A DNA stretch of 63,286 bases, counting the filler, from Olpidium bornovanus S191 (Eukaryota; Fungi; Olpidiomycota): the NCBI GenBank assembly GCA_017911155.1. It is 30 parts of 30 records of this genome, joined end to end, with 100 filler letters (N's around TTAATTAATTAA, not from the genome) between each part and the next. Parts side by side here need not be neighbours in the genome. Positions count along the whole stretch, not along the records: positions 36,343 to 41,605 come from JAEFCI010011713.1; 29 more parts are not named here. One strand, written 5' to 3'. Under the pieces are notes generated by a model. It was given only the letters and a program-made list of their open reading frames with translations. It made no database searches and had not been told where the DNA came from. The position numbers and the translations under genes were made by a program. This document shows positions 33,783 to 41,705 of this stretch, piece by piece. How positions within the stretch are numbered: the first letter of the stretch is position 1; the number at the start of each line of letters is the position of its first letter.

Positions 33783-34460
33783 AACACGAGCATCGACTAC
33801 AGGATTCATTGTCAACTACTGTGGAACACCCATTTCTTGGCGTTCTGCACGGCAGACATGTGTTGCAACGTCTTCGTGCGAAGCGGAATTCATTGCAGGG
33901 TCTACAACTGCACAGGAGATACAATGGATTCGAGCCATGATGAAGAGCATCGAGCCAAGTACAGTTACGCAAACCACCAAACTCATGATCGATAATACTG
34001 GCGCGGCAGAACTGGCTGCAGATGTCAAAACGTCAAGACGCTCAAAGCACATTGACATCAAGTATCATCATCTGCGTCGATGCGTGCAAGACGGCATGGT
34101 TACAATCGAGCGTGTTGCCACCGCCGATAATCCAGCAGACCTCCTGACAAAGCCACTAAATGATCCAAAGTTCGTCAAGTTCCGGGATATGATCAATGTT
34201 GGATCATACCTGGGTTGAGAAAAGTACACAGGAGAAACCGCCATGGCGTCAAGAAGGGAAAGGTGAAATAACGAAAATGGCGATGTTTAGCTTGACCATG
34301 GCCGTCTTAGTGCGCTTAGTGAGGAGGGGGGTTAGAAATAAAGAACCGAGCCACCGTAGCACTGCGCGCACCCGCCCGGAGATTTTCCTTCTATGTAAAA
34401 CCCGGCAGATCGGCGGAACACAGAAGCTCTTTGAGCTCCTCTCAAAACTCATATTCTACA
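33783..34460 (+). mobile_element. 3' end of a Ty1/copia element: intact RNase H, polypurine tract and ~130-bp 3' LTR
   Basis: ISWRSARQTCVATSSCEAEFIA...DNTGA...RSKHIDIKYH...ADNPADLLTKPL, stop 34218; PPT GAGGAGGGGG at 34321; putative LTR GTTAGAA...TTCTACA at ~34331-34460. Confidence 0.88.
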
Positions 34461-36242: not shown

Positions 36243-36444
36243 NNNNNNNNNNNNNNNNNNNNNNNNNNNNNNNNNNNNNNNNNNNNTTAATTAATTAANN
36301 NNNNNNNNNNNNNNNNNNNNNNNNNNNNNNNNNNNNNNNNNNTCATGTGCGTGATAATTTCCTATTCCAAAAGAAAAAAAGAAAATAAAAAAGGTTACGA
36401 GCGGGCGTCTCTAATCAACGAAATAACAGGTCGACGCGCAAAAC

Positions 36445-38049
36445 CTTAATGTCGGCATCTTCAATCTTATCTAGGGCGGTCGTCGGATCGTATTCCTCCC
36501 GCCGATAACGAAGGAGTTGCGACAAGGTGAAGATGTGCGTCCCCTCAAGGAATAGCTCAGCGATGACGCACCTGCGAGATGGGTTCAGAGGGAGTGGGGG
36601 TGAGCAATGGCGAGATCACGCACTGAGTGAGACAAAAACGAGGTCGAATTCCTTAGAAACGTGCCCAAGAGCGAAAATGTCCATCGACTTCTCGAGCCTT
36701 CTGCCGGACTCTGGAGCAAAAGTTGCGCTCTGACGGCGTCACTGGAAATGAGCGACGGCTTTTTCGAGAGGAGGAGATGCCCCCGAAAAAAAAAAACCCC
36801 CTCCCTGGGACGCTCGCTCGCGAAACTCGTACCCGCCTTTCTGCCTCTTCCGAAGGGCCGAAAAACCGCTCCGGCGCAATGTAGCAGGTCCGTCTCGTCG
36901 ACGTATCATAGTAGAAAGAAAAATCGGACGGGTTGTCCTAATGCGGGCCGAAAGCAAAAAAAAAAAAAAAAGGGGGGGGGGGGGGGGGGGGGGGGGAGAG
37001 AAGACGAATGAGCCATCCCCGGGATGTCACTTCCACACGGACGTTGGAAACTTGCCTCAAGCGATGGGCGTATCCTACCTCCGGCAGATAGGTAGGCTTG
37101 AAGCTGGCGAAATCCGTCAAGTACACCCAGTTCCAGCTGGTGACAAGGACGTTCTCCGCCTTGATGTCGCCGTGGCAAACGCCTTTCCCGTGCACGTCCG
37201 CCACGCCGCGCAGCAACTGGTAGGCGATCCACCTCTTTTCAATCAGGTTCAGAAACGGGCGCGTGCTGGGTGGGACAGGAGCGCGGGATATCAGCAGATC
37301 GGGCTCGAGGGTGGCGTGGGGGCAGACGATTCGCTGTTGTTTTTTTGACTAAGGACGCCGGCGTCTGCCTTTGCGCTAACCTGATGCGATCGTAAAGGTT
37401 GCTGAAGAAGTACTGGCGAACGAGGTACCCCGCCCTGTCCGTTTCGACGATCAGCTGGTGCGCGCAGACGTTGGGGACTTCGGCGAGAAGCGTCTGCTCA
37501 ACTGAAAAAAAAAAAAAAAAAAAAAAGGAAGGCCCGCGCGGGGGGGTGTGAGCGTCCCCGCCGAGGGCACCCCGGGGGTTTTTGCGCCGGCTTTTTTAGG
37601 ACGCGCCGGCGTTCCGGCCCGCGGGCGAGTTTTTTTTTTTTTTACCTTTCAGCTGCTGCACGTACGCCTGGAGCGAGAAGGTCGGCTCCGACTTGACGAA
37701 GATCTTGACAACAACCGGCCCTTCCTTGTGGCGCCCTTTGATCGCTTTCAGGAAACGGGCCGAGCCGAGGCTTTATTTTTTCGAGGCGGCGGCGGCGGGG
37801 AGGGGAGGAAATCCGGGAGAAAACGGGCCCCCGAAAGCCGCGCGCGTCCCGCCGGTTTCAGAACTTGGCGACTCTCAGGCAAAGAAAAAAAAAAAAAGAT
37901 TCGTCCCAAAAAACGCGCCGTCCTCCCTACTTCCTTTGGGGCCCCCGCCCTCACCTCCTCTCGTACTGGACCTCCCCGAGTTCGCTCACGTAGCTGTCTA
38001 TCCCGGCCGTCGTGGTGGACGGTATCGCGAGCGTTACCGCGTTGCCCAT
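36445..38049 (-). CDS. VPS15: Vps15/PIK3R4 kinase domain exons, 3' truncated
   Basis: MGN myristoylation start; [14 protein letters not shown]; [15 protein letters not shown]; HGDIKAEN; [14 protein letters not shown]; CYIAPERF; ELFLEG. Confidence 0.95.
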
Positions 38050-38420
38050 TCTCGCGCCGAGCGTGTTCCTTCGCGACCGCTGGGACTGGGGAGAATTCCG
38101 GGGCGACCTCCAGCACCGAGGAAAAGAGGGCGTGTAGCCGCAGATAGGGAGAACGGGAGGGCTTTTCTTTGCCGGGAGGGGAATGGGGAGGGGAGGAGGG
38201 GGGGGGCGACCGCGTCGACCGCACCGCCGCTCTTCTTCCCCCCCCCCCCCCCCCCCCCCCGATCGCTTTCGCCTGCCGTCGCAAATCTTTGTTGCGCGGA
38301 ACTACTTCAGTCCGCCTTTCTCGGGTTTTCTTTTTTTTTTTTTTTTTTTTTTTTTTTCGTTTTGGCCCCAACCTCCTGTTGGAATTGGCTTCGCAGGGCG
38401 AGCCAGAGACCTGGTGAATA

Positions 38421-38492
38421 GGGCAGATAGTTCAGTTGGTAGAGCGTACCTCCGGGAAGGGAAGGTCCTGAGTTCGACCCTCGGTTTGCTCA
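38421..38492 (+). tRNA. tRNA-like gene inside the LTR; nominal anticodon GGG (Pro), atypical
   Basis: 72-nt cloverleaf: acceptor GGGCAGA/TTTGCTC, D-stem GTTC/GAGC, T-arm CTGAG-TTCGACC-CTCGG, A and B boxes, TTTT 2 nt downstream; C at position 33 and an A-A mismatch in the anticodon stem. Confidence 0.75.
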
Positions 38493-39503
38493 CTTTTAAT
38501 GCGCAACAGGTTATTGACCCCAAACTTAGACTCCCCGTTCAGCCGTTGAATCAAAAAAAGGGAGGAAGACCCGCCGTCCGTCGGCACTCACGGAAGACTT
38601 GCCGTTTGTCGGCAACGTCCCGGCCCACCGTCCGTCGGCGCCCAAACCAACCATGGAGGAGAAAAAGGAGCACAACACCACTGAACCCTCCTTCAACCAT
38701 GGAAGTAGAGAGGTGGAGACAAACCCTGGGAGAGTACAACACCCCAGCAGACCAACGAGGGAGGACACGCCAAAGCACGAAGAGCAAGTCAGAACCGCGA
38801 AGTAACTCGCGAGGTTCTGAACTATCCGTCACCCCGCATGCATCGTCACAACTGTCCAGGCTGTCCGCCCGCTCACAGAAAATCGTGGACTCAGTCCTCC
38901 TTCGACGAGAACAAGCTCGACGCCACAGAGAAGAGGCGCTTACAACGGACAAAGTCACAGCCCTGCAAAAGCAAATATCCGCACTCCAGGAGGAGAAGAG
39001 AATCATGGCTAACCGGCTGAAGGACCTAGAAGACATGATCGTGGAGCTCACCCCAGCAGAACGCCCCACGGCAGTAGACTTGAAGGTCGAAGACCCCAAC
39101 GAAGGACCCCACGAAGGTGGGCGAGAGACACTGAACGCCCTGTTAGCAAGAACACTGCTCGGGGCAATCCCAATGTACAACGGGACCGGCGGCGCGACAA
39201 CGCTCAACAGCTTCATCAACAAGTTAGAGATGGCAACAAAAAGAGCGGGCTTCAACAAGGAAGAAATACTCGATCTGGCTTTCAACCGCCTCACGGGACA
39301 AGCAGCCGTCATGTGGCAAAGCCACTCCATGGCAAACCCAGAAGGAAGCCGCCTGCGCTGGGACTGCTGGGAAGACCTGAAGAAAGCGCTCATTGCTGCT
39401 TATTACCCGCGGGAACACCTGCAGACTGCAATGGTGAAACTCATGGAGATAACCCAGCAAAGCTGCGGCAATGATCTCGAGAAGTTCATCGAGACATTCA
39501 ACG

Positions 39504-40178
39504 TGTACTGCGGCAAGGTTAAGCGTCTATTCCTCCCCTCGTCAGGTCTGAGGCGGTGCTACAGGTAAGGTGACGAGGGCTGACAGTGCAGTCCGAAAGG
39601 GAAAGGTTAAGGCTAAGCCAAAGTCCGGTTTCGGTAAAGTTCAATGGGGTCGAAGTCAAGCTACGGAGCGGAAGGGACGCTATTTATGCTCGTCGACGTT
39701 GAGCGGAAGGCAGGTCGACGGCAGAGCCGTCCTTCGGCGTCTCGTCCGTCGACGCGGTGCGTCCAGTCCCTTCCCGCCCGGTTACCACGCGGGGCTCCGA
39801 GCTCTTGTGTGCAGTGGGGCGCGGGGGGGTGCGGGGCAATCGGGGGGGGGGGTTCTGGTTGGCGGGGGTCCCCGAGTGCGGCGCTGGGGAGGAAGGGGGC
39901 AAGGGGGGAAGCTCTTCAATTGGCGGACTTCGAGGGGGGAAGGGGGGAAGCTCTTTTCAATTGGCGGGCTTCGAGGGGGACTATTCTATTGGTTGGCCCC
40001 CTGGTTCGGGGGCCGTCCTGCCCTCGATCCCGCCGCCGCCTCCGCCCTTCGCCCTTTGCCCTGCCGTCCCTCGCCCGCCGCCCCTCGCCCGCCGCCCCTC
40101 GCCCGCCGCCCTTCGCCCGCCGCCCGCCTTCGGTGGCGTCGGTCCAGGGCGACGGTTCGAGGGCCGTGCTACATCACA
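39504..40178. mobile_element. 675-bp solo LTR nested in gag
   Basis: TGTAC...TCACA flanked by a perfect 5-bp TSD CAACG (39499-39503, 40179-40183); internal GC-rich tandem repeats. Confidence 0.88.
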
Positions 40179-41085
40179 CAACGCCCTGCACATGGAACAG
40201 CCGGCCCCGCGTGACGAGCGAACGTGGGCAATTAAATTCCATATGGGGCTCCCAGTGGACATTAGGCGCAGTGTCATGCAGATGGTACCTGCACTCGGCA
40301 GCCTCGAGGAAATCCAAGAGGCAGCAAGGCGAGACCTCCGCATGACAGGCGGGGCATCCAACAAATCCACAAGCATCAACGGGGCAGGAGCGGCAGGGAA
40401 ATCGACCAAGAAGGACATCAAGTGTTTCAACTGCAACAAACGAGGGCACATTGCTCGGGAATGTCGGTCACCTCAGAAGGAGAAAAGGAACATTCCCGCC
40501 AAAAGGAGCACAGGAACCGAGAAGAAGGGCAAGCCCGAAAAAGACGAAAAGACCCAAAAGAAGGAGGACAACATACACGCCGCATGCACTGCAGGCGTCA
40601 TCGGAGGAGGAAACGACACAGCAGCCCCAGCTCAACTGTGTGCCCCCGCTACGAGAGCCAGGATCACCTTGGACAGTGGCTCGACCAGGCATGTGGTGCC
40701 GGATGCCCGCTGGTTCCCCTCTTTCCAGCCCATGAATACGAGGGTCTGGACGGCGTCGAGAGCAAACGAACCGGCCACAACCGCGGGAACCGTCGATGTC
40801 TTGACCGATTCAGGGGACCGGCTCTCGATTATGGACACCCTCCATACGCCGACTTTTTGCATGGCCCTCTTCTCTGTCCCTGCCGCAACATTCTATGGAC
40901 TCGACGTTCTCTTCAAGGCGAATGGTCGAGCGTTCATATACAAAGAAGACCGACTGCTCGCGACCGCCACTTGGGACGAGCGCGACCGTCTGTTTTACCT
41001 CGACGGTGACGTTATCATGACCAAGAACGACGTCCAAGCCTGTGCAGCAATGCCAGTAACGTCAGAGTACGTCCTATGGCATGCC

Positions 41086-41486
41086 TGTGCTGTGGACGTT
41101 GGTCGCGGTTTTTTGGGTTAAAGCTTTTTATTGCTGTCAAGTCTTTTGTTCTAGCTCTTGTTACTGGTTCTGGTTCTCTACAACGTCATGGAGGGGGTCT
41201 ATTTATACCCACGGGCGTGGCGCTGTTGTGAAGCGAGAAGCTCAAGGCGACTATCGATAAAAGATTGGGCTGAACGTGAGGCTGCGGAAGAAGAAGGATT
41301 ACGCGTTGTGACTCGAGACGCGTATGGTTCCCCCCCCCAAACAATTCATGTCATAATTCACGTTTGGATGGCAGGTGGTTGGTCGCAACCCCTAAATGTT
41401 TTACTATAGCGCACCCACCCGCCAAAGCCCAGTCTCTCTCTCTCTCTCCTCCCACTACCTGAAATATAACGCGTTACCAAACCACA
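41086..41486 (-). mobile_element. second, reverse-oriented LTR-like insertion breaking the pol ORF at LWHA
   Basis: Starts TGTG exactly where homology stops; minus-strand TATAAATA (41200-41207) and AATAAA (41127-41132); right boundary uncertain. Confidence 0.55.
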
Positions 41487-41705
41487 TGCGACGAGTCGAA
41501 ACGGTGGCTTCTGAAGGGGTACCCGTTCGAGCAAACGACGCGGAGTGCAGTTCCCTTCACGGATCAAAGAAGCCGTCGACGGAAGTAGAGGAGCTAACTC
41601 GGCAANNNNNNNNNNNNNNNNNNNNNNNNNNNNNNNNNNNNNNNNNNNNTTAATTAATTAANNNNNNNNNNNNNNNNNNNNNNNNNNNNNNNNNNNNNNN
41701 NNNNN

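What the first reader, a model, noticed from the sequence alone, without database searches (positions are those of the whole stretch)
38377..38521. Retrotransposon LTR that carries a whole tRNA-like (Pol III) gene
Seen: a 132-bp segment bounded by TGTTG...CAACA is followed directly by GGTTATTGACCCC and then gag, so it reads as a 5' LTR. More than half of it (38421-38492) is a foldable cloverleaf with A box, B box (GTTCGACCC) and a T4 tract, and it has no AATAAA or clear TATA box. Two other copia LTRs in the window are the same size (18800-18940, ~34331-34460) but have no tRNA, which supports the boundaries. Known: plant Cassandra TRIMs carry 5S-rRNA-derived Pol III promoters in their LTRs, and Ty1/Ty3 insert near, not around, tRNA genes. 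Inference: this may be an autonomous LTR family that captured a tRNA/SINE head as promoter, insulator or TFIIIC-recruiting module. T4 is a weak terminator in yeasts, so read-through into gag is plausible. I do not know of a described fungal equivalent.
Basis: partly seen in the sequence, partly recalled or inferred. Interest (0 to 1): 0.9.

Follow-up and report, generated by a model that had tools for sequence, protein, structure and literature searches.

The report
tRNA-bearing LTR on a fungal copia
A dead copia-type retrotransposon, most likely from the root-parasitic fungus Olpidium, has a 132-bp terminal repeat built mostly from a decayed tRNA copy; this design was described in 2024 ("Helenus") only for tiny non-coding elements of rusts and mushrooms, so the new points are the host lineage and the attachment to a protein-coding element.

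Summary
A 132-bp segment (38377-38508) starts with TGTTGGAAT and ends with CAACA. It abuts an anticodon-loop-type primer-binding site and lies 190 nt upstream of a copia gag-CCHC-protease reading frame. It contains a 72-nt tRNA-like sequence (ARAGORN hit; Rfam 40.1 bits, E 4e-6) followed by T4.

The tRNA-like sequence is not a working tRNA: it has C33, a broken anticodon stem and anticodon GGG. Two related Olpidium bornovanus copia elements start their LTRs with the same TGTTGGAA and carry the PBS GGTTATGAGCCC, but have no tRNA.

Kojima 2024 (PMC10886601) described "Helenus": TRIMs of rusts and agarics whose 106-284-bp LTRs have this same layout. Those elements are non-coding. Here the LTR is joined to a coding, though broken and truncated, copia.

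No second copy of this LTR could be found in any collection I could search, and the 3' LTR is off the contig. I therefore cannot tell a replicating autonomous lineage from a one-off TRIM x copia recombinant. I rate it a new variant of a known kind, of moderate interest.

The parts
38372..38376 (.). CCTCC, the 5 bp next to the LTR; expected half of a 5-bp target-site duplication
   Evidence: Read. The matching 3' copy cannot be checked because the 3' end of the element is not in the piece.
38377..38508 (+). 132-bp 5' LTR of Helenus type (TGTTGGAAT...GCGCAACA, perfect 5-bp inverted ends)
   Evidence: The same TGTTGGAA start is seen in related LTRs at L002:566 and L004:1103. The layout matches short rust Helenus LTRs.
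38377..38420 (+). 44-nt 5' part of the LTR (U3-like), with no TATA box and no similarity to related LTRs beyond the first 8 nt
38421..38493 (+). tRNA-like module (pseudo-tRNA, nominal Pro-GGG). D arm, T arm and acceptor stem are intact; the anticodon arm is defective (C33, A28/A42 mismatch).
   Evidence: ARAGORN. Rfam tRNA model 40.1 bits against a gathering score of 29, E 4.3e-6.
38428..38439 (+). A box TAGTTCAGTTGG (T instead of C at tRNA position 11)
   Evidence: Alignment to the Rfam consensus.
38470..38480 (+). B box GAGTTCGACCC
   Evidence: Alignment to the Rfam consensus.
38494..38497 (+). T4 run, a weak Pol III terminator, 11 nt before the LTR end
   Evidence: Rust Helenus LTRs have a T3-T4 run at the same place.
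38509..38521 (+). Primer-binding site GGTTATTGACCCC of the anticodon-loop (half-tRNA initiator-Met) type, differing at 2 positions from GGTTATGAGCCC
   Evidence: Relatives L002:733 and L004:1385 carry GGTTATGAGCCC. That 12-mer occurs 48 times in the Helenus sequence file (DataS1), including at the start of the internal portions shown.
38522..38698 (+). Leader. The first ~35 nt are homologous to the L002 leader. It contains a purine tract AAAAAAAGGGAGGAAG (38553-38568) and a 21-nt direct repeat (38570-38590 and 38624-38644).
38699..39503 (+). gag, first part
   Evidence: Pfam Retrotrans_gag E 2.8e-6. 79% and 72% amino-acid identity to O. bornovanus proteins. 91% nucleotide identity to L001.
39504..40178 (+). 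Nested 675-bp TG...CA repeat (solo-LTR-like) with a 5-bp target-site duplication CAACG (39499-39503 and 40179-40183); it interrupts gag
   Evidence: Copies occur in L004 (87%) and L005 (82%).
40184..41082 (+). gag second part, CCHC zinc knuckle (40417-40467) and protease beta-barrel (40666-40890); homology stops after ...YVLWH
   Evidence: Pfam zf-CCHC E 1.3e-6 and Pol_BBD E 1.4e-10; translation.
41083..41605 (.). Unrelated repeat that truncates the copia element; integrase, RT and the 3' LTR are not in the piece
   Evidence: short reverse-strand matches to L005.

Best explanation
The 132-bp segment is the genuine 5' LTR of a dead Ty1/copia-type retrotransposon, most likely of Olpidium bornovanus. 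The LTR is of the Helenus (TRIMp3) design. It has 44 nt of 5' sequence starting TGTTGGAAT, then a 72-nt tRNA-derived module that keeps the Pol III A and B boxes but has lost tRNA function, then a T4 run and 11 nt ending CAACA.

Inferred mechanism, by analogy with Helenus and Cassandra:
- TFIIIC and Pol III bind the tRNA-like module.
- Transcription starts near its +1 in the 5' LTR.
- The weak T4 lets part of the polymerases read on into the PBS and the internal region.
- The same T run in the 3' LTR ends the RNA, so the tRNA-like part would serve as R.

Reverse transcription is primed on GGTTAT(T)GA(C)CCC by the 5' half of initiator tRNA, as in Ty5 and copia. The tRNA-like module itself is not the primer.

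What differs from Helenus is that the LTR is joined to a gag-CCHC-protease reading frame. This arose in one of two ways, which I rate about equally likely. Either an autonomous copia lineage carried this LTR, or a Helenus-like TRIM and its copia helper recombined during reverse transcription or at the DNA level.

This copy is old and inactive. Its PBS is mutated, gag is split by a nested repeat, and the element is cut off after the protease.
For: Shown:
- LTR ends, PBS and gag order.
- tRNA-like module.
- Related O. bornovanus copia elements L002 and L004 have LTRs of 167 and 282 bp that start with the same TGTTGGAA and end CA|GGTTATGAGCCC. This fixes both LTR boundaries here.
- TGTTGGAA is unique in the piece.
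- Rust Helenus LTRs of 110-130 bp have the same layout: 28-45 nt, tRNA-like, T3-T4 run, 10-20 nt, then CA followed by GGTTATGAGCCC or GGTTATGGGCCC. Eight of them contain TGTTGGAAT.
- Kojima reports conserved A and B boxes, mostly non-functional tRNAs, copia-type PBS and 5-bp TSDs for fungal Helenus.
- The first ~35 nt of the leader and the gag start align with the contiguous leader of the autonomous relative L002. This argues that LTR, PBS, leader and gag form one element.

Inferred: Pol III use, the role of T4, and R = tRNA-like.
Against: - Only one copy exists in the data I could reach, and only the 5' LTR of it.
- BLASTN of the LTR and leader against eight related loci found nothing.
- Pattern and protein scans of metagenome, viral and prokaryote collections found nothing.
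- Pol III is unlikely to transcribe a multi-kb coding element. A T5 at 40854 and a T4 at 40993 lie in the sense strand of the short coding part that is present.
- Kojima argues that autonomous partners must use Pol II promoters.
- A and B boxes each deviate from consensus at 1-2 positions.
- No transcription data could be obtained; no sequencing run was listed.
Confidence: 0.7

Rival explanations
1. A remnant of a Helenus-like TRIM (5' LTR, PBS, 60-nt internal part ending in a polypurine tract at 38553-38568) whose 3' LTR was lost and which now abuts a 5'-truncated copia. On this reading the coding part never belonged to this LTR.
For: The purine tract AAAAAAAGGGAGGAAG lies 60 nt after the LTR. 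Fungal Helenus internal portions can be as short as 51-62 nt and end in similar tracts such as ...caagggagga.
Against: - No TGTTGG LTR start follows the tract.
- A second 16-nt purine run lies in the same leader at about 38655-38670, so such tracts are not unusual here.
- Both ends of the leader match the contiguous leader of L002.
- It needs two precise deletions.
Confidence: 0.09
2. A private secondary event: a tRNA-derived SINE or tRNA retrocopy landed in this one copy's 5' LTR after integration, so the family's LTR has no tRNA.
For: Kojima proposes SINE insertion into an LTR as the origin of such LTRs. Related Olpidium copia LTRs lack a tRNA.
Against: - Removing the tRNA-like part plus T4 leaves only 55 bp, too short for a working LTR (general knowledge).
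- There is no A-rich tail and no target-site duplication around 38421-38497.
- The layout equals that of established Helenus LTRs.
Confidence: 0.07
3. A host tRNA (pseudo)gene in the VPS15 promoter that attracted insertions. On this reading TGTTGGAAT upstream and CAACA downstream are leftovers of separate events or chance.
For: Ty1, Ty3 and other elements of compact genomes target tRNA genes (papers listed). The locus is an intergenic promoter region 328 bp from the VPS15 start.
Against: - The LTR start lies 44 nt upstream and the LTR end 15 nt downstream of the tRNA-like sequence, so the sequence is enclosed rather than flanked.
- The 8-mer TGTTGGAA is expected about 0.005 times in 300 bp and is shared with relatives.
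- The tRNA is defective.
- The layout is identical to Helenus LTRs.
Confidence: 0.07
4. An assembly artefact: MEGAHIT joined a TRIM at the VPS15 locus to a copia located elsewhere, through a shared leader sequence.
For: The assembly is a short-read (2x100) metagenome-style MEGAHIT assembly with 2-kb mean contigs. In rusts, Helenus internal parts share up to 198 bp with a copia leader.
Against: - De Bruijn assemblers break rather than join at repeats.
- The copies seen here are 9-30% diverged, so long identical k-mers are unlikely.
- The contig also runs cleanly through a nested repeat with intact target-site duplications.
Confidence: 0.07

Closest known systems
Helenus (TRIMp3) non-autonomous LTR retrotransposons of Pucciniales and Agaricomycetes (Kojima 2024, PMC10886601)
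   Same: - LTR of 106-284 bp that starts TGTT... and carries a tRNA-derived module with A and B boxes close to its 3' end.
- A T3-T4 run follows, then 10-20 nt to the terminal CA.
[quoted passage not shown]
- The PBS and leader are copia-related.
- The tRNA part is usually non-functional and not complementary to the PBS.
   Different: - Helenus elements are 311-1263 bp with a 51-354-bp non-coding interior and two LTRs. Here a gag-CCHC-protease frame follows a 190-nt leader.
- The host is Olpidiomycota, not Basidiomycota.
- The D arm of this tRNA-like sequence (TCAGTTGGTAGAGC) appeared only in oyster Helenus entries among the DataS1 passages shown (2 of 5 occurrences).
- Copy number and target-site duplication are unknown here.
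Cassandra TRIMs of plants (5S rRNA-derived Pol III promoter in the LTRs)
   Same: A small-RNA gene with an internal Pol III promoter embedded in both LTRs of an LTR element.
   Different: The module is 5S rather than tRNA (the Rfam scan of the piece listed no 5S match). Cassandra occurs in plants, is non-coding, and has a different PBS type.
Ty5 / Drosophila copia (Ty1/copia superfamily)
   Same: TGTTG...CAACA LTR ends, a PBS pairing with the anticodon stem-loop of initiator tRNA, and the order gag - CCHC - protease (from my own knowledge of these elements).
   Different: Their LTRs are Pol II promoters of 250-280 bp without any tRNA-like sequence.
tRNA-gene-targeting retrotransposons (Ty1, Ty3, Tj1, Dictyostelium TRE and DGLT-A)
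   Same: Physical association of a retrotransposon with a Pol III gene.
   Different: Those elements integrate beside a host tRNA gene. Here the tRNA-like sequence is inside the LTR.

Membership tests
Helenus / TRIMp3 (Kojima 2024) | LTR contains a tRNA-derived sequence with box A and box B | tested here: met
   ARAGORN. Rfam tRNA 40.1 bits over the full model. Box A TAGTT...TGG and box B AGTTC each deviate at one position from the paper's TRGCY/YGG and GGTTC motifs.
Helenus / TRIMp3 (Kojima 2024) | Short LTR (fungal range 106-284 bp) with TG...CA ends and the tRNA-like part near the 3' end, followed by a T run | tested here: met
   132 bp, TGTTGGAAT...CAACA, T4 one nt after the tRNA-like part. 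Compared by eye with consensus sequences and lengths.
Helenus / TRIMp3 (Kojima 2024) | [quoted passage not shown] | tested here: inconclusive
   GGTTATTGACCCC differs from GGTTATGAGCCC by one inserted T and one G-to-C change. It is of the right type but imperfect, and the host initiator tRNA was not available.
Helenus / TRIMp3 (Kojima 2024) | Non-autonomous TRIM: two LTRs around a short non-coding interior (51-354 bp), full length 311-1263 bp | tested here: not met
   A gag-CCHC-protease frame follows. There is no second tRNA-like sequence or LTR anywhere in the 3.1 kb downstream.
Helenus / TRIMp3 (Kojima 2024) | 5-bp target-site duplication; interspersed multi-copy family with solo LTRs | not testable with these tools
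   The 3' end is off the contig. The full eukaryote assembly cannot be searched by DNA. Scans that could be run found no other copy. No sequencing run was listed.
Ty1/copia (Pseudoviridae) LTR retrotransposon | gag with CCHC, then protease, integrase, RT/RNase H in that order | tested here: inconclusive
   Retrotrans_gag, zf-CCHC and Pol_BBD are present in order. The closest relatives carry Pol_BBD plus gag_pre-integrs. Integrase and RT are missing because the element is cut at 41082.
Functional nuclear tRNA gene | Intact cloverleaf with U33, a paired anticodon stem and a decodable anticodon used by eukaryotes | tested here: not met
   C33, an A28/A42 mismatch, anticodon GGG, and a score of only 40 bits.
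Self-primed LTR elements (Tf1 type), or the LTR tRNA acting as primer | Complementarity between LTR/5' RNA and the PBS | tested here: not met
   The longest complementary stretch is 5 nt, at or below what shuffles give. No site in the piece is complementary to the tRNA-like 3' end plus CCA.
Cassandra | 5S rRNA-derived sequence in the LTR | tested here: not met
   The Rfam scan at E<=1 lists no 5S match in the piece.

The most novel reading that the evidence does not exclude
Olpidium harbours, or once harboured, an autonomous Ty1/copia lineage whose own LTRs are tRNA-derived Pol III-type modules. This would be a coding counterpart of Helenus. It would mean that tRNA-bearing LTRs can serve protein-coding elements. 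It would also mean that Helenus-type TRIMs can arise by internal deletion of such elements, not only by SINE insertion into a TRIM, and that the design reaches back to early-diverging fungi.
Probability: 0.33. Interest if true: 0.72.

Novelty: new variant of a known kind. Interest (0 to 1): 0.48.

Why it matters
LTR elements that carry a small-RNA gene as promoter (Cassandra, Helenus, Ajax) are so far known only as tiny non-coding parasites. The Helenus paper argues that their helpers must use ordinary Pol II LTRs because Pol III is poorly processive.

A coding copia with such an LTR, if it ever replicated, would challenge that argument. It would ask what the tRNA module really does: Pol III start, TFIIIC-bound open chromatin or insulator, or an RNA-processing signal. 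It would also offer a route for the origin of Helenus.

It extends the design from Basidiomycota to Olpidiomycota, the zoosporic lineage nearest the terrestrial fungi. On the practical side, such LTRs inflate tRNA gene counts in fungal annotations.

If it is only a one-off recombinant, it is a curiosity that documents exchange between a TRIM and its helper.

Tried and rejected
1. Sequencing runs.
2. Other copies of the LTR.
   - The pattern TGTTGGAA-N31-61-TTCAGTTGGTAGAGCG in metagenome contigs gave 0.
   - A B-box...CAACAGGTTAT pattern and a 22-mer of the tRNA-like arm in viral contigs gave 0.
   - The same 22-mer in prokaryote genomes gave 0.
   - BLASTN of the LTR and leader against eight fetched loci gave no hit.
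   - These blanks say little, because the eukaryote assembly itself cannot be searched by DNA here.
3. Relatives through protein.
   - gag found two O. bornovanus proteins.
   - The second gag-protease piece and the gag N-terminus found none within the length limits.
   - Metagenome and viral protein scans found none.
   - The representative search gave more Olpidium copia contigs, none with a tRNA.
   - Exact-ORF look-ups across the LTR found nothing on record.
4. I first read 39518-40200 as an in-frame GT...AG intron in gag. Rejected: it is a nested 675-bp repeat (39504-40178) with target-site duplication CAACG, also present in L004 and L005.
5. tRNA-like module as primer or Tf1-like self-priming: rejected.
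6. Origin by read-through of the primer tRNA during plus-strand synthesis. Rejected on orientation and position: that would place an antisense tRNA copy downstream of U5, whereas this copy is sense and lies inside the LTR.
7. MAFFT aligned the T arm with the relatives' PBS at 15 of 22 positions. My estimate is that about 3 such matches are expected by chance for sequences of this size, so I dropped it.
8. Pol III transcription of the whole coding element is judged unlikely because of sense-strand T5 and T4 runs.

Full report
**What is in the piece**

The piece (36343-41605) has three parts.

- On the minus strand, 36343-38049 holds the N-terminal exons of a VPS15/PIK3R4 orthologue. A 61-residue exon hits PIK3R4 at E 1e-26, and the start codon is at 38049.
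- On the plus strand from 38377 lies a copia-type retroelement.
- From 41083 an unrelated repeat cuts that element off.

The closest relatives of the gag are two Olpidium bornovanus proteins from assembly GCA_017911155.1, at 79% and 72% identity. One of their contigs is 91% identical in DNA over 350 bp. The piece is therefore most likely from O. bornovanus or a very close relative. That assembly is a MEGAHIT short-read, binned assembly of 13,695 contigs totalling 29 Mb.

**Check of the observation**

- TGTTGGAAT starts at 38377, and CAACA ends at 38508 directly before GGTTATTGACCCC.
- ARAGORN finds a tRNA at 38421-38493 with anticodon GGG.
- Rfam's tRNA model matches end to end at 40.1 bits, against a gathering score of 29, with E 4.3e-6.
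The LTR has no AATAAA and no TATA.
- gag (Retrotrans_gag), a CCHC knuckle and the protease beta-barrel follow.

The tRNA-like part is not a working tRNA. It has C33 instead of U33, an A28/A42 mismatch in the anticodon stem and anticodon GGG. Its minimum-energy fold is no better than that of shuffled sequence. The D arm, T arm and acceptor stem are intact.

**Are the LTR boundaries real?**

Two related O. bornovanus copia elements were fetched.

- L002 has a 167-bp LTR starting TGTTGGAAAA and ending CA, followed by GGTTATGAGCCC.
- L004 has a 282-bp LTR with the same start, the same end and the same PBS (patterns).
- Neither contains a tRNA.

In the piece, TGTTGGAA and CAGGTTAT each occur exactly once on either strand. 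An 8-mer is expected about 0.005 times in the 300 bp upstream of a PBS. The 3' boundary is fixed by the PBS and the 5' boundary by the family-typical LTR start, so the tRNA-like sequence lies inside the LTR, not beside it.

The ~35 nt after the PBS and the sequence around the gag ATG both align with the short contiguous leader of L002. This argues that LTR, PBS, leader and gag form one element.

**Comparison with what is known**

A literature search found Kojima 2024 (PMC10886601), which describes Helenus.

- Helenus elements are terminal-repeat retrotransposons in miniature whose LTRs carry a tRNA-derived sequence.
- 113 families occur in rust fungi, and a few in Agaricomycetes.
- They make 5-bp target duplications.
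- They show signs of mobilisation by Copia elements.
- Their tRNA parts are mostly non-functional and not complementary to the PBS.

Fungal Helenus LTRs are 106-284 bp and the interiors 51-354 bp. The consensus sequences show the same layout as here: 28-45 nt starting TGTT (eight contain TGTTGGAAT), then the tRNA-like part, then a T3-T4 run, then 10-20 nt ending in CA. The 12-mer GGTTATGAGCCC occurs 48 times in the consensus file, including at the start of the internal portions shown.

The difference is that every Helenus is non-coding and under 1.3 kb. The author argues that the autonomous partners must use Pol II LTRs because Pol III is poorly processive. Here the same kind of LTR is followed by a coding copia.

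**State of this copy**

The copy is old and dead.

- The PBS differs at two positions from the canonical 12-mer.
- gag is split by a nested 675-bp TG...CA repeat (39504-40178) with target-site duplication CAACG. Copies of that repeat occur in L004 and L005.
- I first took this stretch for an in-frame intron. Comparison with L004 shows that gag continues exactly across the insertion.
- The reading frame ends after ...YVLWH at 41082, where another repeat begins.
- Integrase, RT and the 3' LTR are therefore not available.

**Search for other copies**

What could be run found nothing:

- No sequencing run was listed.
- DNA patterns in metagenome, viral and prokaryote collections gave nothing.
- Protein scans of metagenome and viral contigs gave nothing.
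- BLASTN of the LTR and leader against eight fetched Olpidium-type loci gave nothing.
- Exact-ORF look-ups gave nothing.

The same-family fragment L001 lacks its 5' end. The contig runs straight through the LTR in a k-mer assembly, which fits the absence of a near-identical second copy. LTRs diverged by a few percent would not break the contig either.

**Mechanism**

By analogy with Helenus and Cassandra, I infer the following. The A and B boxes recruit TFIIIC and Pol III. RNA starts near 38421. The weak T4 allows read-through in the 5' LTR and ends the RNA in the 3' LTR, so the tRNA-like part acts as R. The 5' half of initiator tRNA primes on the PBS.

The tRNA-like part does not prime: the longest complementarity to the PBS region is 5 nt, within the shuffle range.

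For a multi-kb coding element this scheme is doubtful, because a T5 at 40854 and a T4 at 40993 lie in the sense strand. Two options remain. Either the module served a Pol II-transcribed element in some other way, for example as an open-chromatin or TFIIIC site. Or the combination arose by recombination between a Helenus-like TRIM and its copia helper and did not spread. I rate these about equal.

**Rivals**

- A TRIM remnant fused to a truncated copia. A PPT-like tract lies 60 nt after the LTR, but no LTR start follows it, and a second 16-nt purine run lies in the same leader.
- A private SINE or tRNA insertion into this one LTR. It would leave only a 55-bp LTR, and no tail or duplication is visible.
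- A host tRNA gene flanked by chance motifs. The enclosure, the shared 8-mer and the Helenus layout speak against it.
- An assembly chimera. This is unlikely given the divergence of the copies.

Each is rated below 0.1.

**Verdict**

It belongs to a kind described in 2024, but it fails one defining feature of that kind: being a non-coding TRIM. It also comes from a new fungal phylum. I rate it a new variant of a known kind with moderate interest, limited by resting on a single decayed 5' LTR.

Noticed in passing
window 36343-38049 (minus strand): N-terminal exons of a VPS15/PIK3R4 orthologue (MGNAVTL... start at 38049). The exon at 37079-37261 hits PIK3R4 at E 1e-26. The LTR's 5' end lies 328 bp upstream of this start codon, in divergent orientation, so the element sits in the VPS15 promoter region.
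   Followed up: partly
window 36958-37000, 37505-37527, 37630-37643, 38237-38260, 38327-38357: Very long homopolymer runs in introns and the intergenic region: A16 followed by G27, A23, T14, C24-25, T30. Similar G/C runs fill the start of L002. They may be a real feature of this genome or a sequencing or assembly artefact.
   Followed up: no
window 39504-40178: Nested 675-bp TG...CA repeat (solo-LTR-like) with 5-bp target duplication CAACG (39499-39503 and 40179-40183), splitting gag. By coincidence GT...AG sites at 39518 and 40200 would keep the frame and mimic an intron. Copies of the repeat occur at L004:2701-3007 (87%) and L005:4564-4735 (82%, reverse).
   Followed up: yes
window 41083-41605: The copia frame stops right after YVLWH, where relatives continue into the pre-integrase domain. 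The following 523 bp are a different repeat with two short reverse-strand matches to L005 (86-90%).
   Followed up: partly
L002:566-744 and L004:1103-1396: Related O. bornovanus copia families have unusually short LTRs (167 and 282 bp) starting TGTTGGAAAA. Their PBS GGTTATGAGCCC is identical to the 12-mer found 48 times in the rust Helenus sequence file. L002 has a TATA-like CATATAGAG in its LTR and a leader of only 47 nt.
   Followed up: partly
L007 (Logan contig of run SRR26555696): A 1-kb contig from an unrelated public run encodes a gag 56% identical in protein and 70% in DNA to this family. Relatives of these Olpidium copia elements therefore exist in at least one other data set.
   Followed up: no
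window 38653-38805: An upstream ATG at 38653 opens a 50-codon frame that overlaps the gag start at 38699 in another frame. The motif AACCATGGA occurs twice, 46 nt apart, which suggests a small duplication in the leader.
   Followed up: no
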